A stretch of 54,625 nt of DNA from Octopus bimaculoides (Eukaryota), in assembly GCF_001194135.2 (NCBI RefSeq), contig NC_068990.1, positions 5,591,593 to 5,646,217 of the forward strand. Reading direction: 5' to 3'. Of this stretch, positions 1 through 54,207 are shown piece by piece. The notes beneath the pieces were generated by a model, which made no database searches, was not told the origin of the DNA, and worked only from the letters and a program-made list of their open reading frames with translations. Position 1 is the stretch's first letter. Every line of letters starts with the position of its first letter. The position numbers were made by a program, and so were the translations under genes.

Positions 1-1132
1 GATAAAGTTGCTGTTTCTTTTCAGATTTCATCAGAAAAAGGTAAATGAAATTCATTAAAATGACACATTTATCGGACTTTCAAAGAGGTCAAATTGCTGG
101 TGCTCATATGGCAGGCGCTAGCGTAACGAAAACAGCTGAAATGTTTGTTACATCAAGAAGTACTGTCTCGAAAATAATGACAGCCTTTGAGAAAGAGGGG
201 AAAACTTCCTTGTCGACACAAAACTCCGGAAGAAAACCAAAACTTTCAGATAGGGACCGTCGGACTCTTACGCGAATTGTTAGAAAGGATCCCAAAAGTA
301 CAGCTCCCAGAATTACTGCAGAGCTTAATGACAACCTCGAGAACCCAGTTTCCACAAAAGACTGTTCGCCGGGAGCTGCACAATGCTGGATTTCACGAGA
401 GGGCTGCAATCAGAAAACCACTACTTTCAAAAACAAACGTTGCAAAGCATTTAGAGTGAAGTAAAAACCTAATTGGTCCCTAGAGTAGTGGAAGAATGTT
501 ATTTTCTCGGACGAGTCATCATTTACCTTATTCCCGACCACCGGCCGAGTATACGTGTGGAGACAGCCAAAAGAAGCATTTGACCCAGCTTCCTTCTTCC
601 AGCTGTTAAAAATGGAGGAAGATCTGTGATGATCTGGGGGGCTATGTCTTGGAAATCCGCCGACCCAATGGTTTCCCTTCATGGCAGAATTAATAGTCAA
701 GACTTTTTAAACATTTTATCTGATCAAATCCATCCTATGGTTGCAGAACTGTTTCCGGAGGGAAATGCAGTCTTTCAGGATGAAAATATACCAATTCACA
801 CAACTAAATTGGTACTGAATGGCACGGGGAACATTCTAATGAAGTTGAACATCTTATCTGGCCACCACATTTCCCAGATCTCAATATTATAAAAAGATTA
901 TGGTGCATTTTAGTAAAACAAGAGTCGATATCCTCCACCATCATAAATACAAAAACTGGAGACTGATTTAGCTGAAGAATGGACAAAAATTCCTTTGGAA
1001 ACAACTGAAACTTTGTACGAGTCCACACCTCGTAGAATTGAAGCTGTAATTACTGCCAAAACGGTCGTACCCCATATTACAATAAATTTGTTTGAAATTT
1101 TCAGGTGTTTCCATTATTTTGTCCAACCACTG
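1..1132 (+). mobile_element. Tc1-family DNA transposon, decayed; left end lies outside the window
   Basis: Frameshifted transposase: paired-like HTH (LSDFQRGQIAGAHMAG...GRKPKLSDRDRR), WKNVIFSDESSF (~490-525), VMIWGAMS, FQDENIPIH and a WPP..PDLNII-like motif. AATAAA at 1081. Right TIR-like end ...ggtgtttccattattttgtccaaccactg followed by TA (1133-1134). Confidence 0.93.
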
Positions 1133-1338: not shown

Positions 1339-1515
1339 AGTTCTATATTTAAGAAATCAGGAATTATGTACATTATTTACATTTGACGGATATTTGTCCT
1401 CATCTTGCTTGTTGTTAACACAACGTTTCGACTGGAGGGTATATCAGAAGAAACGTTGTGTTAACAACAAACGATGAGGACAAATATCCGTCAAATGTAA
1501 ATAATGTAAATAATG
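1339..1515. mobile_element. Palindromic non-autonomous element, centre-deleted copy of the family at 51262-51493
   Basis: Inverted arms ~1365-1430 and ~1450-1514. Clear similarity to 51262-51493. Identical 14-bp flanking direct repeat aacaaatttggcac at 1325-1338 and 1516-1529. Confidence 0.85.
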
Positions 1516-7829: not shown

Positions 7830-8007
7830 GGGAGGGTGTACGTCGATTACATCGATCCCAGTGTTTTGCTGGCACTTAATCTATCGACCGGAAAAGATGA
7901 AAGGCAAAGTCGACCTCGACAGAATTTGAACTCAGAACATAAGGGCGGACGAAATGCTGCTAAGCATTTTGCCCAGCGTGTTAACGGTTCTGCCAGCTCG
8001 CTGCCTT
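7830..8007 (-). mobile_element. SINE family A
   Basis: Reverse complement begins aaggcagcgagctggcagaaccgttaac...ttctgagttcaaattctgtcgaggtcgactttgcc. Confidence 0.85.
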
Positions 8008-10552: not shown

Positions 10553-11126
10553 NNNNNNNNNNNNNNNNNNNNNNNNNNNNNNNNNNNNNNNNNNNNNNNN
10601 NNNNNNNNNNNNNNNNNNNNNNNNNNNNNNNNNNNNNNNNNNNNNNNNNNNNNNNNNNNNNNNNNNNNNNNNNNNNNNNNNNNNNNNNNNNNNNNNNNNN
10701 NNNNNNNNNNNNNNNNNNNNNNNNNNNNNNNNNNNNNNNNNNNNNNNNNNNNNNNNNNNNNNNNNNNNNNNNNNNNNNNNNNNNNNNNNNNNNNNNNNNN
10801 NNNNNNNNNNNNNNNNNNNNNNNNNNNNNNNNNNNNNNNNNNNNNNNNNNNNNNNNNNNNNNNNNNNNNNNNNNNNNNNNNNNNNNNNNNNNNNNNNNNN
10901 NNNNNNNNNNNNNNNNNNNNNNNNNNNNNNNNNNNNNNNNNNNNNNNNNNNNNNNNNNNNNNNNNNNNNNNNNNNNNNNNNNNNNNNNNNNNNNNNNNNN
11001 NNNNNNNNNNNNNNNNNNNNNNNNNNNNNNNNNNNNNNNNNNNNNNNNNNNNNNNNNNNNNNNNNNNNNNNNNNNNNNNNNNNNNNNNNTCATCCATACC
11101 TTAGGGTAAATTAAGTTAACGGTTAC

Positions 11127-12417: not shown

Positions 12418-13227
12418 CTTTTACTATTTTACTTGTTTCAGTCATTTGACTGCAGCCATGCTGGAGCACCGCCTTTATTCAACAAATAGACCCCAGGACT
12501 TATTCTTTGGAAGCCTAGTACTTATTCTATCGGTCTCTTTTGCCGAACCGCTAAGTTACGGGGACGTAAACACACCACCATCGGTTGTCAAGCGATGTTG
12601 GAGAGACAAACAATGACACACAAACATATACCTATATATATATATATATATATATTCGACGGTCTTCTTTCAATTTTCGTCTACCAAATCNNNNNNNNNN
12701 NNNNNNNNNNNNNNNNNNNNNNNNNNNNNNNNNNNNNNNNNNNNNNNNNNNNNNNNNNNNNNNNNNNNNNNNNNNNNNNNNNNNNNNNNNNNNNNNNNNN
12801 NNNNNNNNNNNNNNNNNNNNNNNNNNNNNNNNNNNNNNNNNNNNNNNNNNNNNNNNNNNNNNNNNNNNNNNNNNNNNNNNNNNNNNNNNNNNNNNNNNNN
12901 NNNNNNNNNNNNNNNNNNNNNNNNNNNNNNNNNNNNNNNNNNNNNNNNNNNNNNNNNNNNNNNNNNNNNNNNNNNNNNNNNNNNNNNNNNNNNNNNNNNN
13001 NNNNNNNNNNNNNNNNNNNNNNNNNNNNNNNNNNNNNNNNNNNNNNNNNNNNNNNNNNNNNNNNNNNNNNNNNNNNNNNNNNNNNNNNNNNNNNNNNNNN
13101 NNNNNNNNNNNNNNNNNNNNNNNNNNNNNNNNNNNNNNNNNNNNNNNNNNNNNNNNNNNNNNNNNNNNNNNNNNNNNNNNNNNNNNNNNNNNNNNNNNNN
13201 NNNNNNNNNNNNNNNNNNNNNNNNNNN

Positions 13228-16335: not shown

Positions 16336-16568
16336 NNNNNNNNNNNNNNNNNNNNNNNNNNNNNNNNNNNNNNNNNNNNNNNNNNNNNNNNNNNNNNNNN
16401 NNNNNNNNNNNNNNNNNNNNNNNNNNNNNNNNNNNNNNNNNNNNNNNNNNNNNNNNNNNNNNNNNNNNNNNNNNNNNNNNNNNNNNNNNNNNNNNNNNNN
16501 NNNNNNNNNNNNNNNNNNNNNNNNNNNNNNNNNNNNNNNNNNNNNNNNNNNNNNNNNNNNNNNNNNNN

Positions 16569-18167: not shown

Positions 18168-19073
18168 GAGAGAGACAGAGAGACAGAGACAGACAGACAG
18201 AGACAGAGACAGAAAGAGAGAGAGAAAGAGAGAAAGAGAAGGAGATAAGAGAGATAGATCTAGATATATATATATATATATATATAAATCAATTCTATAG
18301 TTGTTATTATCGTCGAGCCTCACTCACACTATCTCTCTCTCTTTCTCTCTTTCTCTCTTTCTCTCTCTCTCTCTCTCTCGCTCTCTCGACACACACATCA
18401 ATTAACTGCGAGAAAACAGGATAAGAAAAAAGTCATTCATGAGAATGCGAAATTAATATACAGAACTTAACAAAAACTATTCGGACTCGTGAAAATAAGC
18501 TGAAATACTAAATCAGTAAATCCTTTGAGGATCGGGTTAAAAACAAAACATAACAAACAAGATAAGACAAAAGAAGAATATCCAAAACAATAAATTGTAG
18601 CAAAATCTTCACAGACAGACGATTCGAAAAACAATTTAAGCAATGCATACGGGAAGGGCTTAGTCGATACCATGGAGCCTAGTACTTAAGAGTTACTTGT
18701 TTTATCGGTTCTGAAAGGATGAATGGTTAAATTGATCCAGGCGGGATTTAAAATCACGGAGCAGAAAGTTTATTAAATATAAATGAAAAGAATGAACCAA
18801 ATTAAAATACGTAAATAAGATAGTGTTATATTTCGGGATGGTCTATTTTAAAAAATCTTTGCCAAAAACACACACGCACTCTACATAAACGTAAATAAGA
18901 TAAGCAATATTCGTAGCCACTTCAACATGGCTGTCCGTTCGAACAGACTCTACTCGCTAGTTTGTTGACCGATACCCAAGAGGATATCTATTGTAGCTTG
19001 TTAACGATGCACAGCTGCATCCGATAAAATTGCGAGCAGGGGATCGAGCCCCTATCATCTCCTAGCGACGGGA

Positions 19074-19117
19074 CCAGTACATCAGTCCTGGTTTCGGCTA
19101 TGTCTGCCATTCCTCAG
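19074..19117 (-). ncRNA. Degenerate inverted copy of the 19366 hammerhead, probably inactive
   Basis: Minus strand: CUGAGGA-AU-GGC-AGACAUA-GCC-GAAA-CCAG-GA-CUGA-UG-UACUGG. The triplet is AUG instead of GUC, and the 5' strand of helix I is missing. Confidence 0.75.
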
Positions 19118-19365
19118 CTGTACATCGTTAACGAGCTAGAGGAGATGTCCTCTTGGGGTTAAAAAATCGCAGTAGAGTCCGCTCGAACGAACAACCATGT
19201 TAAAGTGGCTACGAATATTACTTGTCAGTACAACTACTGCGTTGATCTCTCAGAAAATTTAGAACTAGCATTTTTGCTTATTGAAAAATCAGCGTCTTTG
19301 TGTTCGCTTGAAATATAGATATTGCGTGCAGAGCGAGCTGCTATCATCACTAGCAGACGAGGTGT

Positions 19366-19416
19366 CCAGTACTGAGGAGTGGCAGAAATAGACCGAAACC
19401 AGAACTGGTCTACTGG
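19366..19416 (+). ncRNA. Type I hammerhead ribozyme, complete
   Basis: Helix I CCAGUA(19366-71)/UACUGG(19411-16). Core CUGAGGA (19372-78). Imperfect helix II GUGGC-AGAAAUA-GACC. GAAA (19395-98). Helix III ACCAG/CUGGU. GUC cleavage triplet at 19408-10. Confidence 0.85.
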
Positions 19417-19818
19417 TCCCGTCGCTAGGAGATGGTAGGGGTTCGCACCCCTGCTCACAATTTTATTAGATGCTGCTGGGCATCGTTAACCAGATAGAAA
19501 AGATGTCCTCTTGGGGGTTAAAAAATTCGCAGTAGAATCCGCTCGAATAGATAGCCATGTTAAAGTAGCTACGAATATTACTTGTCAGTACAAGTACTGC
19601 ATTGATATTTTAGAGAAATTTTAGAACTAGTAAATAAGATAGACTTCCTAAAATTACAAAACTGGAAATTTCCCAACTGAAGTATAGGAGTTAAGGAACT
19701 AGTATAGAGAGACACCATAGAGTTTTGAACAAATCAGGAAACCAGCACGTCAAGAATTCTGTACATAACAATGGCTGTCGATCATTGAAGTCATGAACAT
19801 ATAAGTAAGTCACGAAAA

Positions 19819-20032
19819 TATAAGGTGTTGAAAAGTTCTTGGCTTTAAGAGTATCGTGAAAGGCCAGGCTGGAGGCCAAACCTTCCTAATTCATTTACTG
19901 GGCTTAGAAAGACTGACGGACTGCTGCAACAAGTGTATGGATTTGAGAGGGGAATATGTTGGATAAAATCATAATTAACCGATACTCTATTTTCTTATAC
20001 CCAAAACCGGGAACATTTTAGCACTCCTCGTA
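19819..20032 (+). mobile_element. Internally deleted mariner derivative (MITE-like)
   Basis: Imperfect TIRs tataaggtgttgaaaagttcttggcttt and aaaaccgggaacattttagcactcctcgta. Internal remnant CNKCMDLRGEYVG* resembles the transposase C-terminus. Confidence 0.75.
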
Positions 20033-22587: not shown

Positions 22588-22737
22588 CACATGTAGTTTC
22601 CGCCGAGGTCGACTTTGCGTTTCATTACCTCAGAGTCTAATAAAGATAAAATAAGTACCAATTGGTTACTGGAGTCAATGTAATTGACTATCCCTCTCCT
22701 ACAAAATTTCAGGTCTTGTGACTATAGAAGAAAGGAT

Positions 22738-22790
<53 letters not shown>

Positions 22791-50128: not shown

Positions 50129-50805
50129 NNNNNNNNNNNNNNNNNNNNNNNNNNNNNNNNNNNNNNNNNNNNNNNNNNNNNNNNNNNNNNNNNNNNNNNN
50201 NNNNNNNNNNNNNNNNNNNNNNNNNNNNNNNNNNNNNNNNNNNNNNNNNNNNNNNNNNNNNNNNNNNNNNNNNNNNNNNNNNNNNNNNNNNNNNNNNNNN
50301 NNNNNNNNNNNNNNNNNNNNNNNNNNNNNNNNNNNNNNNNNNNNNNNNNNNNNNNNNNNNNNNNNNNNNNNNNNNNNNNNNNNNNNNNNNNNNNNNNNNN
50401 NNNNNNNNNNNNNNNNNNNNNNNNNNNNNNNNNNNNNNNNNNNNNNNNNNNNNNNNNNNNNNNNNNNNNNNNNNNNNNNNNNNNNNNNNNNNNNNNNNNN
50501 NNNNNNNNNNNNNNNNNNNNNNNNNNNNNNNNNNNNNNNNNNNNNNNNNNNNNNNNNNNNNNNNNNNNNNNNNNNNNNNNNNNNNNNNNNNNNNNNNNNN
50601 NNNNNNNNNNNNNNNNNNNNNNNNNNNNNNNNNNNNNNNNNNNNNNNNNNNNNNNNNNNNNNNNNNNNNNNNNNNNNNNNNNNNNNNNNNNNNNNNNNNN
50701 NNNNNNNNNNNNNNNNNNNNNNNNNNNNNNNNNNNNNNNNNNNNNNNNNNNNNNNNNNNNNNNNNNNNNNNNNNNNNNNNNNNNNNNNNNNNNNNNNNNN
50801 NNNNN

Positions 50806-50869: not shown

Positions 50870-51085
50870 CTTTGTGTCTGTGTTTGTCCCACCCTCTTCA
50901 TCGCTTGACAACCGCTTTTGGTGTATCTTTGTCTGTGCAACTTAGCACTTCCACGAACGACCGACAGAACAGGTATTAGGCTTTAAAAAAATTGAGTCGT
51001 GGAGTCGATTTATCCAACTAAAACTCGTCAATGCTCTGCCTCAGGATGGCTGCAGTCAAATGACTGAAGCAAGAGAAAGATCAGA
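50870..51085 (+). mobile_element. SINE family B 3' half
   Basis: catcgcttgacaacc...gtcgattt...atggctgcagtcaaatgactgaagcaag. Confidence 0.75.
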
Positions 51086-51099
51086 AGAATAAAATAATC

Positions 51100-51250
51100 A
51101 TTACATTCTGAGTTCAAATTCCGCCGATGTCGACTTTGCGTTTCATTCTTTCGGGGTCGATAAATTAAGTACGAGTTGCGTACTGAGGTCGAGCTAATCG
51201 ACTGGACCCACCCCCAAGAAATGTCGGTTCTTGTGCCCAGAGTAGAAAAG
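51100..51250 (+). mobile_element. SINE family A, 5'-truncated
   Basis: ttctgagttcaaattccgccgatgtcgactttgc...ggggtcgataaattaagtac...agagtagaaaag. Confidence 0.88.
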
Positions 51251-51307
51251 AATAAAATAATTTACATTATTTACATTTGACGGATATTCGTCCTCATCTT
51301 TGTTGTT

Positions 51308-51353
51308 AACACAACGTTTCGGATGATATACTCTCCAGCCTTCGTCAGGTGTC
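51308..51353 (-). ncRNA. Minimal type I hammerhead ribozyme, antisense arm copy
   Basis: Same motif on the minus strand with one helix II mismatch (GGCUG/CAUCC). Confidence 0.72.
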
Positions 51354-51371
51354 TTGGGGAAATTTCCCAAA

Positions 51372-51417
51372 GACACCTGACGAAGGCTGGAGGGTATATC
51401 AGCCGAAACGTTGTGTT
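51372..51417 (+). ncRNA. Minimal type I hammerhead ribozyme
   Basis: GACAC-CUGACGA-A-GGCUG-(10 nt)-CAGCC-GAAA-CG-UU-GUGUU. Helix I GACAC/GUGUU; helix III reduced to the palindrome AACGUU; GUU triplet. Confidence 0.8.
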
Positions 51418-53514
51418 AACAACAAACAAGATGAGGACGAATATCCGTCAAATGTAAATAACGTAAATAATTCCTCATCTCTTAAATATAGAATAAAATA
51501 ATCGTACTTACTTTCGTATATCTTCATATGAGAGGAACTGGCACCAAAATATGTTTAGACCGGACCGTCAAACCAAAGATATACGCAGTTTATTAACGTT
51601 CCCATTCCCCGAAAATATGACCTCGTGCTCCATCGGCTCCCCATATGTCACACCCATTTGCTGAACCACTCTAATTGAAGCTGTTCAAACTCCTTATCTT
51701 TACTATGAGAGCAATAAATAAACTTATTCATCAGGTTAAAATAGTTTGTTACCAGTGCATTCTACCGAGCTCAAACACATTAATACAGCGATGATGATTA
51801 TACGTTTTACTTTAAGTAAATTAGAGTTAATTGAATAGCTCTCGCAAGTGTTAAATATTTAATTAGAGAAATTGTACTTGCTGTATTACATAATTAAGTT
51901 CATAGATGCTTCTTCGGCTGAAGTAATTTATTAATTTTTCCCACTTGGTTGCTACCAAAGTCATGTGACATAGAAGTATTTAAATGTGCAAACATAGGAT
52001 ATACTTACATTTTAATGTTTCGAAAAAAAATAAATAGATAAAACTTATAGAAATGAAATACAAAAGGTATGATCAGATGTATATAATGTTAAATTTCTCA
52101 GACGTTTTACGTGATCTAGCTATTATAGTCATCTCCTGAAAGGTTTAGAAGATGCAAAAGTGTAGACTACAGTATTCGACCGATGTATTTTTTTTAATGA
52201 ATGCAGAGAATTCATTATCATTATTATTGAATGAGAGAGCAGCACGTGCCATCAAAGTGACACTAAGGTACGAATATACACATGGCTATGATGCTCCCTC
52301 CATTTCGACACTTTCGAAGAGCATTTGGTTTATGAAAGATAGTGGAGAAAGCAACCCTACAATAAAATGGTGTGCTCTAGCAATGACAAAAGCTTAAATT
52401 TATCGTAGTAGGCATTATCTGTGTGCAATTGAAAAACTCAAAACCATGATTTCACTGACTGTATCTTTGAACAGGTGAGATGAAATGTTATCGTCTCGTT
52501 TTCATGTTAAAATATTCCCATTTTAAAGTTTGAATCGTTTTGTATACCAGCAGATTTCGGATTGTAAATTGGTGGACACCACAATTGACAGACAGTCATA
52601 TGAATTCATAGAATTAGATTAGTAAGATCAAATTAAGATATTAACTAGTACTACCAAGTTAAATATCGGAGTAACAGCTCCTCAAGAATAGCAGGACCTT
52701 ACGCATAATGAGTGTCATCAAGGACGTGAAGAAATCGCAAAGAAGATTTTAATAATCTTAAACCATGTCATTGTTTATTTTCCTAATATGTCTATCCATC
52801 CAGGCAAATACTGGGTTTGTCATGAGCTTCAAATGCACACTTCCATGCCACAAAATTATACCGGAAGGTTTGGCGCCATCTCGGCTAAACAAAACTTTTG
52901 TTAATTATAGAACACTACGCAATAAGACTGATCACTTAAAAGTAAAAAATTCAAGTAACACGATATATATGCATGCATGCATGCATGAATGTATGTATGT
53001 ATGTATGTATGTATGCATGCATATATGTACGTATGTATGTACAGTGTCAAATGATATAATATACAGCACCAGTAACAAAGGGTAAAGTGAGTACTTTTAT
53101 GTTTTATACAACAAATTAAAAGAAACCAATACATATACGCACACACAAATATATGTAATTGTATACATACGCATATATACATGTATATATATAAATACAC
53201 AAGTGCTCACAACTAAATGTATATATGTATATGTGTATATATTTATGTCCGTGTTTTATATTTAGGTGTAATTAAATATACGCTGTATAAATATGTGGTA
53301 TGTTCCTATGTACGTATATGGTCTGGTTATCAGATTATAATTTACCTTTGTTCCTATCTCCTTTGATATAGCATTGTGATTGATATATTTGGTGTTGTAT
53401 ATCTCAGATAGCAAAAATCTTTTGTGTGATTTCTTCATTGTCTGAGAAAATGGCGTTATCAGCATTTTGAGGCCTTTAGAACATATACATACATACATAC
53501 ATACATACATACAT

Positions 53515-53555
<41 letters not shown>

Positions 53556-54207
53556 NNNNNNNNNNNNNNNNNNNNNNNNNNNNNNNNNNNNNNNNNNNNN
53601 NNNNNNNNNNNNNNNNNNNNNNNNNNNNNNNNNNNNNNNNNNNNNNNNNNNNNNNNNNNNNNNNNNNNNNNNNNNNNNNNNNNNNNNNNNNNNNNNNNNN
53701 NNNNNNNNNNNNNNNNNNNNNNNNNNNNNNNNNNNNNNNNNNNNNNNNNNNNNNNNNNNNNNNNNNNNNNNNNNNNNNNNNNNNNNNNNNNNNNNNNNNN
53801 NNNNNNNNNNNNNNNNNNNNNNNNNNNNNNNNNNNNNNNNNNNNNNNNNNNNNNNNNNNNNNNNNNNNNNNNNNNNNTATATATATATATATATATATAT
53901 ATATCTTAACACAAATAGACACATATACAAATAGACACATATACAAATAGACACACATATAAATACACACACACACACACACACACATACACACGCACGT
54001 ATATATATTTATATATAATTCCTGCTGGTTAGAATAAAGTCTCTATACAAGTTAGAGACAATCGAAGAATTACGTTGGTATAATGGTAAAACGCCGTTCA
54101 TGCTTACTTTGTTTTCATGTCTCGGGGAAACATTCAACTTCTTCTGTCTAAAGGATGTTTAACCTCACATTGAGCGCTATCGTTTATATCTTTGTATTTT
54201 TCAAGAT

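What the first reader, a model, noticed from the sequence alone, without database searches (positions are those of the whole stretch)
18891..19641. Candidate cephalopod retrozyme: ~360-nt hammerhead monomer in a partial tandem plus inverted array
Seen: the plus strand reads A-D-[S-HHR-C-A-D], where A-D repeats at an offset of 358-362 bp (19117-19268 vs 19476-19630). An inverted HHR-C-A copy (19117 to 18906) precedes it. The 12-mer gtaaataagata flanks the whole array (18891-18902, 19630-19641; a third copy is at 18811). There is no ORF, and the array is CpG/GC-richer than its flanks with many small hairpins (e.g. gtccgttcgaacagac, agccatgttgaagtggct on minus). Established: animal non-LTR retrozymes (newt/axolotl satellite-type, Schistosoma Sm-alpha, coral and mussel examples) are tandem monomers of a few hundred bp with a type I HHR, and are processed to linear and circular RNAs. 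Partial-tandem plus inverted layouts typify PLE-type insertions. Inference: this is a self-cleaving, possibly circRNA-forming, non-autonomous retroelement family. I do not know of one described for octopus, but cannot check the literature.
Basis: partly seen in the sequence, partly recalled or inferred. Interest (0 to 1): 0.9.

Follow-up and report, generated by a model that had tools for sequence, protein, structure and literature searches.

The report
Decayed hammerhead-ribozyme retroelement insertion
This ~740-bp stretch is an old, decayed insertion of a small non-coding mobile element carrying a hammerhead self-cleaving-ribozyme motif, laid down in the layout typical of Penelope-type retrotransposition; it is a probable new example of a known kind, and this copy cannot make RNA circles by itself.

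Summary
The described structure is real. A 362-nt unit (19269-19630) is preceded by a direct partial copy (19117-19268) and an inverted partial copy (18899-19117). An exact 12-bp duplication flanks the whole array. The unit carries the only classical type I hammerhead-like motif in the window (19366-19416, predicted cut 19410/19411). Core nucleotides, a 6-bp helix I and a 4-bp helix III are canonical, but helix II is poor. Rfam gives no significant match. A standard descriptor scan (0/400 simulated windows) and a covariance model built from three validated retrozyme ribozymes (E about 0.005) both single the site out.

The three copies differ by 14-18% in a star-like pattern dominated by G>A and C>T changes, so the insertion looks old. 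Only one complete ribozyme is present and the inverted one is dead, so this locus cannot release a monomer or circle.

I found no other copy in the window or in any reachable database, none of which holds animal genomes. Family size, ribozyme conservation and activity remain untested, and the cephalopod origin is unverified.

Best reading: a fossil, Penelope-style insertion of a retrozyme-type element. It is a new member of a known kind and of modest interest. Two other unrelated hammerhead-bearing insertions lie in the same window.

The parts
18811..18822 (+). Third, upstream copy (T1) of the 12-mer GTAAATAAGATA. With its flanks (18809-18823) it looks like the intact 15-nt target site.
   Evidence: It shares 'AC' on the 5' side with the copy at 18891 and 'G' on the 3' side with the copy at 19630.
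18824..18888 (.). Spacer X of about 66 nt between the first and second copies of the 12-mer. It may be an earlier small insertion at the same site or a PLE-type 'tail'. Its nature is unresolved.
   Evidence: It has no copy elsewhere in the window. PLE tails are described in PMC8557442.
18891..18902 (+). Left target-site duplication (T2), GTAAATAAGATA.
   Evidence: It abuts the array and overlaps the end of the inverted copy by about 4 nt of microhomology.
18899..19117 (-). Inverted partial copy, equivalent to unit positions about 104-318. Its 5'-truncated end meets the direct copies head-to-head at 19117.
   Evidence: 82% identity to 19372-19586; alignment.
19074..19117 (-). Dead hammerhead remnant in the inverted copy. 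It starts at CUGAGGA, lacks the 5' strand of helix I, has A at 10.1 and a C.A mismatch in helix III, and has G at position 17.
   Evidence: Alignment; fold. Not found by the covariance model at E<=10.
19117..19268 (+). Direct partial copy, equivalent to unit positions about 207-362. It carries no hammerhead.
   Evidence: 85% identity to 19475-19630.
19269..19630 (+). Full 362-nt unit.
   Evidence: The circular fold is -99.7 kcal/mol against -87.2 +/- 5.0 for shuffles, z = -2.5.
19321..19460 (+). Long imperfect hairpin in which helix I of the hammerhead is extended outward (GACG/CGUC, CUAGC/GCUAG, CUAUCAUC/GAUGGUAG and further pairs).
   Evidence: MFE folds.
19366..19416 (+). Type I hammerhead-like motif: CCAGUA / CUGAGGA / GU-GGC-AGAAAUA-G(A)CC / GAAA / ACCA-GAAC-UGGU / C | UACUGG. 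The predicted cleavage is between 19410 and 19411.
   Evidence: Descriptor scan. Covariance model R1 built from validated retrozyme hammerheads: 17.9 bits, E 0.0055, second-best hit in the window. Rfam HH9 gives only 13.8 bits.
19630..19641 (+). Right target-site duplication (T3), GTAAATAAGATA.

Best explanation
The region 18891-19641 is one old retrotransposition footprint of a small (~362-nt), non-coding, hammerhead-bearing element of the metazoan non-LTR retrozyme type, integrated by a Penelope-like (PLE) mechanism.

Inferred sequence of events:
1. A source locus elsewhere was transcribed as a multimer. Its type I hammerhead cut after GUC, and unit-length RNA was probably circularised.
2. 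A PLE-type endonuclease made staggered nicks at the two ends of the 12-bp site GTAAATAAGATA, in the A/T-rich tail of a SINE.
3. Reverse transcription primed from the right-hand nick ran more than once around a circular or multimeric template. This gave 1.42 head-to-tail units (19117-19630).
4. A second priming from the opposite nick, about 44 nt upstream on the template, gave the inverted partial copy (18899-19117).
5. The two cDNAs were joined head-to-head at 19117, and gap repair produced the 12-bp duplication.

Shown:
- the architecture and the duplication;
- the hammerhead-like motif with a canonical core and canonical helices I and III;
- the absence of coding capacity;
- the star-like 14-18% divergence of the three copies.

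Inferred:
- the RNA circle;
- the PLE enzyme;
- that a family exists.

Today the locus is a fossil. A + strand transcript could be cut at most once (19410/19411). The inverted ribozyme is dead, so no monomer or circle can come from this locus.
For: - Layout: the repeat layout is confirmed. It matches the published PLE insertion pattern of a partial tandem plus an adjacent inverted 5'-truncated copy (PMC8557442).
- Duplication: an exact 12-bp repeat sits at both array borders and the 12-mer is absent from the rest of the window.
- Hammerhead: this is the only classical type I hammerhead descriptor hit in the window, with 0.035 expected per window at relaxed thresholds and 0 of 400 simulations at the observed stringency. 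It lies inside an array that covers 1.3% of the window.
- Independent model: a covariance model built from the coral, mussel and axolotl retrozyme hammerheads that were shown to cleave (supplement of PMC7229834) ranks the site second in the window at E about 0.005. The next background hit is at E about 1.
- Type of hammerhead: a stable helix III and a 6-bp helix I are the 'classical' retrozyme form, not the minimal PLE form (PMC7761336; PMC4209133).
- Element properties: unit size of 362 nt, GC of 44%, no ORF and a duplication longer than 4 bp fit the retrozyme description.
- Local context: the same window holds PLE-style head-to-head 5'-truncated pairs with minimal hammerheads and their own duplications. 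PLE-type integration has therefore operated in this genome.
- Age: star-like divergence with mostly G>A and C>T changes, including CpG decay, fits copies that were identical at birth and decayed in place.
Against: - No second copy of the unit was found in the other ~50 kb of the window by blastn or nhmmer. None was found in any reachable database. A 'family' is therefore assumed, not shown.
- Rfam hammerhead models do not reach significance.
- Helix II is only GGC/G(A)CC, with two unpaired nucleotides on its 5' side, and both copies share this. The source RNA probably had it too.
- The hammerhead fold is about 7 kcal/mol above the local MFE.
- The whole-unit fold is only moderately better than shuffles (z = -2.5). 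The paired fraction is 0.64 against 0.62.
- Copies differ by 14-18% while the 12-bp duplication is perfect. The chance of that is about 0.14 if the age is equal.
- A third copy of the 12-mer lies 80 nt upstream and is unexplained.
- The junction 19268/19269, which defines the 362-nt 'unit', is seen only once.
Confidence: 0.6

Rival explanations
1. The three pieces are independently 5'-truncated copies of the 3' region (pseudo-LTR) of a longer, possibly autonomous, Penelope-like element. They would not be copies of a dedicated ~360-nt retrozyme. The junction at 19268/19269 would then join two separate cDNAs rather than being a continuous circle or tandem junction.
For: - PLE insertions are typically heavily 5'-truncated, arranged in partial tandems and accompanied by inverted copies, with hammerheads in the pseudo-LTR near the 3' end.
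- Retrozymes and PLE pseudo-LTRs are homologous in Xenopus.
- The D|S junction is seen only once here.
- Unpaired nucleotides at the 5' end of stem II are a PLE-hammerhead trait.
Against: - The hammerhead has a stable 4-bp helix III and a 6-bp helix I. PLE hammerheads are described as minimal forms lacking helix III, with a helix I of 4-5 bp and a long helix II.
- The true minimal form is present elsewhere in the window and looks quite different.
- No RT or GIY-YIG ORF is present in the window.
- In the PLE model the downstream copy of a partial tandem is normally full-length, which would make the element 362 nt long.
Confidence: 0.2
2. This locus is itself an active retrozyme gene that is transcribed, self-cleaves and yields a ~360-nt linear and circular RNA. 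This is the strong form of the first reader's reading.
For: The full unit keeps every core nucleotide, the GUC cleavage triplet and perfect helices I and III. Natural retrozyme hammerheads tolerate short or imperfect stem II, for example a U.U closing pair in axolotl Ax353 (sequences).
Against: - Only one complete hammerhead lies on the + strand, because the upstream partial copy stops short of it.
- The inverted copy has G17 and no helix I 5' strand. Two cuts one unit apart are therefore impossible.
- The locus fails the criterion of at least two consecutive complete hammerheads.
- The ribozyme region diverges as fast as the rest (6 differences in about 45 nt), and stems elsewhere have picked up mismatches. 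There is no sign of selection since insertion.
Confidence: 0.04
3. The structure is a local DNA-level duplication and inversion (or a foldback or TIR element), and a hammerhead-like string occurs in it by chance.
For: The locus is single in the window. Rfam is not significant. Helix II fails.
Against: - Chance expectation for the motif is 0.035 per window at relaxed thresholds and 0 of 400 at the observed stringency. An independent covariance model gives E about 0.005.
- The array termini are not inverted repeats of each other.
- A 12-bp duplication exactly at the borders is not typical of TIR elements.
- Junction microhomologies and variable 5' truncation fit reverse transcription.
Confidence: 0.05

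Closest known systems
Metazoan non-LTR retrozymes (Cervera & de la Pena 2020, PMC7229834), e.g. the Mytilus galloprovincialis ~350-390-bp repeats
   Same: - Non-coding unit of a few hundred bp (362 nt here).
- GC below 50%.
- A type I hammerhead with helix I open into a long self-paired domain.
- A duplication longer than 4 bp.
- A mollusc-like genomic setting with PLE-type hammerheads nearby.
- CUGAGGA is also the core variant of axolotl Ax330.
   Different: - Only 1.42 direct units with a single complete hammerhead, where the known elements form arrays with one per unit.
- Stem II is 3 bp with a bulged A and two unpaired 5' nucleotides.
- No evidence yet of other copies, transcription, cleavage or circles.
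- An inverted partial copy is attached.
Penelope-like element insertions and their pseudo-LTR minimal hammerheads (Cervera & de la Pena 2014, PMC4209133; Craig et al. 2021, PMC8557442)
   Same: - A partial tandem plus an adjacent inverted 5'-truncated copy, bounded by a target duplication.
- Unpaired nucleotide(s) at the 5' end of stem II.
   Different: - No RT/GIY-YIG ORF.
- The hammerhead has a stable helix III, a 6-bp helix I and a short stem II. PLE minimal hammerheads have no helix III, a 4-5-bp helix I and a 6-8-bp stem II.
Schistosoma Sm-alpha and newt satellite 2 (classical animal hammerhead repeats, cited in PMC7229834 and PMC4209133)
   Same: A repeat of about 330-360 nt with a type I hammerhead. 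Loop 2 (AGAAAUA) is A-rich, like loop 2 of the validated coral hammerhead (AGAAA).
   Different: Those hammerheads have a weak helix III and act as dimers. Here helix III is stable (4 bp plus a GAAC loop) and stem II is the weak element. There is no sequence similarity beyond the core.
L1 'twin priming' inversions (my own knowledge: Ostertag & Kazazian 2001)
   Same: An inverted 5' segment joined head-to-head to a direct 3' segment within one target duplication, with microhomology at the junctions.
   Different: In L1 the two segments come from non-overlapping parts of one linear RNA. Here the inverted and direct parts overlap by more than 100 nt and the direct part exceeds one unit, which needs a circular, multimeric or second template.

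Membership tests
Metazoan non-LTR retrozyme | Type I hammerhead with the conserved catalytic core (CUGANGA / GAAA / A15.1-U16.1 / H17) | tested here: met
   19372-19378 CUGAGGA, 19395-19398 GAAA, A15.1-U16.1, GUC then the cut at 19410/19411. A covariance model built from validated retrozyme hammerheads gives E about 0.005.
Metazoan non-LTR retrozyme | Perfect three-helix topology (helices I, II and III all formed) | tested here: inconclusive
   Helix I is 6 bp and helix III is 4 bp, both perfect. Helix II is only GGC/G(A)CC with two unpaired 5' nucleotides, contributing -1.7 kcal/mol. The inverted copy shares this.
Metazoan non-LTR retrozyme | Match to curated hammerhead covariance models (Rfam clan CL00010) at gathering score | tested here: not met
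   No hit at gathering score. The best is HH9 at 13.8 bits against a cut-off of 52, E=7.
Metazoan non-LTR retrozyme | Tandem array with a complete hammerhead in at least two consecutive units (the criterion for an active locus, bioRxiv 10.64898/2026.07.22.740005) | tested here: not met
   There are 1.42 direct units and one complete hammerhead. TRF does not call the array. This rules out an active locus, not descent from the family.
Metazoan non-LTR retrozyme | Non-coding, about 170-400-nt unit, GC below 50%, duplication longer than 4 bp when present | tested here: met
   Unit of 362 nt, GC 0.44, longest ORF 74 aa without homologues, 12-bp duplication.
Metazoan non-LTR retrozyme | Highly self-paired predicted circular RNA | tested here: inconclusive
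   The circular MFE is -99.7 against -87.2 +/- 5.0 kcal/mol (z = -2.5, 2 of 200 shuffles as low), but the paired fraction is 0.64 against 0.62.
Metazoan non-LTR retrozyme | Multi-copy family with a conserved hammerhead in the genome | not testable with these tools
   No other copy in the window. No animal genome collection is reachable. Protein-word, metagenome, viral and prokaryote scans were all empty.
Metazoan non-LTR retrozyme | Self-cleavage, and linear plus circular unit-length RNA in vivo | not testable with these tools
   This needs in vitro transcription, Northern blot or RT-PCR, and RNA-seq.
Penelope-like element (autonomous) | ORF with a telomerase-like RT and a GIY-YIG endonuclease | tested here: not met
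   The array has no ORF longer than 83 codons. Neither the ten long open frames I sent to Pfam nor, by eye, the rest of the 115-frame list showed RT or GIY-YIG.
Penelope-like element (insertion signature) | Partial tandem (pseudo-LTR) plus an adjacent inverted 5'-truncated copy within one insertion | tested here: met
   compared with the description in PMC8557442 section 6.
Penelope-like element (minimal hammerhead) | Minimal hammerhead: no helix III (palindromic), helix I of 4-5 bp, stem II of 6-8 bp, one unpaired nucleotide 5' of stem II | tested here: not met
   Here helix III is a stable 4-bp hairpin, helix I is 6 bp and stem II is 3 bp. Only the unpaired 5' nucleotides are shared. The true minimal form is at 51372-51417.

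The most novel reading that the evidence does not exclude
A living family of ~360-nt retrozymes exists in this (reportedly cephalopod) genome. Its classical type I hammerhead works despite a non-standard stem II (3 bp with two unpaired 5' nucleotides). It yields abundant small circular RNAs and is copied by the host's Penelope elements from a circular template. In that case this locus would record, base by base, a rolling-circle plus twin-primed integration. A side possibility is that PLE-type integration re-cuts its regenerated target, which would explain the target-site triplications seen twice in this window.
Probability: 0.25. Interest if true: 0.45.

Novelty: new member of a known kind. 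Interest (0 to 1): 0.3.

Why it matters
If a genome-wide search confirms a family, retrozymes (small circular RNAs with self-cleaving ribozymes) would extend to a further mollusc lineage. The papers I could search describe neither a cephalopod hammerhead nor a cephalopod retrozyme.

The locus would also give a clean example of how such elements integrate. The direct part is longer than one unit and overlaps the inverted part, all inside one 12-bp duplication. That argues for a circular or multimeric template and priming from both nicks, which supports the proposed dependence of retrozymes on Penelope-like elements.

The stem II variant would be worth a cleavage assay.

On its own, this single decayed copy is an ordinary piece of repeat annotation.

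Tried and rejected
- Rfam: nothing at gathering score over the whole window. At relaxed E-value, 18500-20000 gave only HH9 at 13.8 bits, E=7.
- Other copies in the window: blastn with word size 7 and nhmmer (single unit and a 3-copy profile) against the window found none.
- Protein-word route to other copies: the 74-aa minus-strand ORF and a six-frame concatenated translation of the whole array gave no hit in 5.8 billion proteins.
- Sampling more of the same genome: a concatenated query of the window's Tc1, mariner and zinc-knuckle ORFs gave no hit at E<=1e-10. Exact look-ups of three window ORFs found nothing on record. The organism could therefore not be verified and no further genomic DNA could be sampled.
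- Exact-pattern scans with the two best-conserved 19-25-mers in metagenome, viral and prokaryote collections all returned zero.
- TIR, MITE or foldback reading: rejected. The termini are not inverted repeats and the duplication is 12 bp.
- RNA editing (A-to-I) as the source of copy differences: rejected. Private changes are mainly G>A and C>T, not A>G.
- Sequence kinship between this unit and the two other hammerhead-bearing elements in the window: none beyond the core.
- A second ribozyme class or a minus-strand hammerhead: none.
- Compensatory changes: the three copies show one candidate compensatory pair (G-C to A-U in the GUCYG...CRGAC hairpin), but other stems gained mismatches. Three sequences are too few to argue for a conserved structure.
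Full report

Yes. Direct and inverted repeat searches and a self-BLAST show three related pieces:
- a full unit at 19269-19630 (362 nt);
- a direct partial copy at 19117-19268, which matches 19475-19630 at 85%;
- an inverted partial copy at 18899-19117, which is the reverse complement of 19372-19586 at 82%.

The 12-mer GTAAATAAGATA lies exactly at both borders (18891-18902 and 19630-19641). It occurs a third time at 18811 and nowhere else in 54.6 kb.

The longest ORF is 74 aa (an 83-codon open frame) on the minus strand. GC is 0.44 against 0.35-0.38 in the flanks, and CpG o/e is 0.95 against about 0.76. Both differences are real but modest. Tandem Repeats Finder does not report the array because it holds only 1.42 diverged units.

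**2. The ribozyme motif**

On the + strand, 19366-19416 reads:

CCAGUA-CUGAGGA-GUGGCAGAAAUAGACC-GAAA-CCAGAACUGGU-C|UACUGG

- Every core nucleotide of a type I hammerhead is present.
- Helix I is 6 perfect pairs and continues outward as GACG/CGUC and CUAGC/GCUAG into a long hairpin (19321-19460).
- Helix III is ACCA/UGGU with a GAAC loop.
- The predicted cut follows GUC, between 19410 and 19411.

The weak point is stem II, which is only GGC/G(A)CC with two unpaired nucleotides on its 5' side. It adds just -1.7 kcal/mol, and the hammerhead fold lies about 7 kcal/mol above the local MFE.

Rfam finds nothing at gathering score. Its best relaxed hit is HH9 at 13.8 bits, E=7. Two independent tests nevertheless single the site out:
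- A standard descriptor (core, helix I of at least 4 bp, helix III of at least 3 bp, no demand on helix II) hits only this locus in the window. Simulated windows give 0.035 loci each, and none of 400 reaches the observed helix lengths.
- A covariance model built from the coral, mussel and axolotl retrozyme hammerheads that were shown to cleave (sequences from the supplement of PMC7229834; model) ranks the site second in the window at 17.9 bits, E about 0.005. Background starts at E about 1. These E-values are rough.

Published natural hammerheads tolerate related oddities:
- Axolotl Ax353 has a U.U closing pair.

Activity is therefore uncertain rather than excluded.

**3. Age and state**

In the roughly 112 nt shared by all three copies, pairwise identities are 82-86%. 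Private changes number 8, 5 and 10. This is a star-like pattern dominated by G>A and C>T, including CpG-to-TpA decay. It fits copies that were identical at insertion and then decayed in place. Heterogeneous templates are an alternative, since mussel retrozyme RNAs are heterogeneous.

The ribozyme region has diverged as fast as the rest. The inverted copy has A at 10.1, a C.A mismatch in helix III and G at position 17, and it starts at CUGAGGA, so it lacks the 5' strand of helix I. The direct partial copy stops short of the ribozyme.

The locus therefore holds one possibly functional hammerhead. [quoted passage not shown]

**4. How it most likely arose**

The layout is the textbook footprint of PLE integration: a partial tandem with an inverted 5'-truncated copy abutting its 5' end, all inside one target duplication (PMC8557442 section 6).

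The direct part is longer than one unit (514 nt). It overlaps the inverted part by more than 100 nt of unit coordinates. A single linear monomer cannot give that result, so the template was circular, multimeric or more than one molecule.

I infer the following:
- Reverse transcription was primed at both staggered nicks of the 12-bp target.
- There was microhomology at the outer ends: about 4 nt on the left and 1 nt on the right.
- The two cDNAs were joined head-to-head at 19117, inside the palindrome CAGCTG.

The classical form of the hammerhead (stable helix III, 6-bp helix I) is the form assigned to retrozymes rather than to PLE pseudo-LTRs. A unit of 362 nt without an ORF, GC below 50% and a long duplication fit the retrozyme description. 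The circular unit folds somewhat better than shuffles (z = -2.5), but the paired fraction is hardly higher.

**5. Context in the window**

The window is a repeat-rich eukaryotic assembly:
- 3,880 N;
- many microsatellites;
- Mos1-type mariner and Tc1-like fragments;
- a tRNA-type SINE present in several copies.

It also contains two other, unrelated hammerhead-bearing loci.

*Locus (a): 51256-51472.* This is a near-perfect palindrome made of two head-to-head 5'-truncated copies, each with a minimal PLE-type hammerhead:

ACAC-CUGACGA-A-GGCUG...CAGCC-GAAA-CG-UU|GUGU

It has a palindromic ACGU in place of helix III and an unpaired A before stem II. It is flanked by the 13-bp duplication AGAATAAAATAAT. 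A second, more truncated family member lies at 1356-1514 with a 14-bp duplication.

*Locus (b): 44295-44355.* This is a hammerhead with a 6-bp helix I, a 4-bp stem II plus a long loop, and a palindromic helix III (AUCAUGAU). It is the top hit of my covariance model at E about 8e-4.

Hammerhead-bearing, PLE-style insertions are therefore common in this genome. This agrees with reports that Penelope elements are abundant in octopus genomes (PMC13282606 and PMC8967140), provided the window is indeed from an octopus. I could not verify that.

**6. Search for relatives**

There is no further copy of the unit in the window. None of the reachable collections holds animal genomes:
- protein-word searches with the 74-aa ORF and with a six-frame concatenate found nothing;
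- exact-pattern scans of metagenome, viral and prokaryote contigs found nothing;
- attempts to reach more DNA of the same genome through its transposase ORFs failed.

**7. Comparison and membership**

In how it was made, the locus behaves like a PLE-mobilised, hammerhead-bearing non-autonomous element. Membership in the non-LTR retrozymes breaks down as follows:
- Met: core, helices I and III, size, GC, lack of coding capacity and duplication.
- Inconclusive: stem II and overall self-pairing.
- Not met: Rfam thresholds and the two-hammerhead criterion. The latter excludes an active locus, not descent from the family.
- Untestable here: family size, cleavage and circles.

The main rival is that these are 5'-truncated ends of a longer PLE. 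I rate it at about 0.2, because the hammerhead is not of the minimal PLE form and the downstream copy of a PLE partial tandem is normally full-length.

**8. Novelty and score**

Retrozymes are reported from cnidarians to amphibians and in molluscs (mussel), and 'in many other invertebrate genomes'. I found no paper in the searchable library describing a hammerhead or retrozyme in cephalopods.

At best this is a new member of a known kind, represented here by a single fossil copy. Interest is 0.3.

**9. Left unexplained**

The target site is present three times, not twice, and the same holds at the 51-kb insertion. In both cases the upstream copy carries both original flanks. It is separated from the second copy by another short retro-insert: about 66 nt of unknown origin in one case and a 5'-truncated SINE in the other. 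This could be two nested insertions at the same staggered cut or one complex PLE event. I could not decide between them.

Noticed in passing
window 51256-51472 (hammerhead-like motifs 51372-51417 + and 51317-51348 -): A near-perfect ~217-nt palindrome made of two head-to-head 5'-truncated copies. Each carries a minimal Penelope-type hammerhead (unpaired A before stem II, palindromic ACGU in place of helix III, helix I of 4-5 bp). It is flanked by the 13-bp duplication AGAATAAAATAAT (51249 and 51490), with a 17-nt extension on the right. The minus-strand motif has a mutated stem II. It also draws spurious matches to miRNA hairpin models in Rfam.
   Followed up: partly
window 1356-1514: A second member (about 92% identity) of the same palindromic minimal-hammerhead family, truncated deeper so that the core is lost. 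It has a 14-bp duplication AACAAATTTGGCAC (1325 and 1516) and a ~22-nt extension on the left. The variable truncation point argues for retrotransposition rather than a MITE.
   Followed up: partly
window 44295-44355 (+): A third, unrelated hammerhead-like motif: AUUAUA-CUGACGA-GUAG...CUAC-GAAA-UCAUGAU-C|UAUAAU. It has a 6-bp helix I, a 4-bp stem II with a 22-nt loop and a palindromic helix III. It is the best hit of the covariance model built from validated retrozyme hammerheads (20.7 bits, E about 8e-4) and has no Rfam hit. It lies about 150 nt before an assembly gap, and no repeat structure is visible around it.
   Followed up: partly
window 18809-18823, 18889-18903, 19628-19642; and 51085-51099, 51248-51262, 51489-51503: The target site is triplicated at two of the three hammerhead-type insertions, in the order T1, short insert, T2, hammerhead element, T3. 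T1 keeps both original flanking bases. The short insert is about 66 nt of unknown origin in one case and a 5'-truncated SINE in the other. This could be nested insertions at the same staggered cut or one complex event.
   Followed up: partly
window 51099-51248, 26671-26777, 22598-22739, 7842-7937 (-), 38172-38262 (-); degenerate copy about 18660-18800: A tRNA-type SINE family (B-box-like GAGTTCAAATTCCGCCGAGGTCGA...GGGGTCGATAAATTAAGTACCAG...) is present in at least five copies. Both the array under study and the 51-kb palindrome sit just 3' of a copy, in its A/T-rich tail.
   Followed up: partly
window 45-889, 2207-2497, 38645-39225 (-), 45785-46192, 34024-34362 (-): Decayed DNA-transposon fragments and one other ORF. 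Tc1-like HTH; Mos1-type mariner HTH_48 (E 6e-14 and 1e-11) and Transposase_1 (E 9e-8); and one ORF with a weak CCHC zinc-knuckle match (19.4 bits, below Pfam's 20.8 cut-off). No reverse transcriptase or GIY-YIG domain showed up in the ten long open frames sent to Pfam or, by eye, in the rest of the frame list.
   Followed up: partly
window-wide, e.g. 10553-11080, 12690-13225, 16336-16568, 32910-33530, 34910-35600, 44506-44770, 50100-50805, 53556-53910 (approximate): There are 3,880 N in several assembly gaps, and nearly all are bordered by TA, TC or AC microsatellites. This fits a short-read scaffold assembly in which complex repeat insertions may be under-represented.
   Followed up: no
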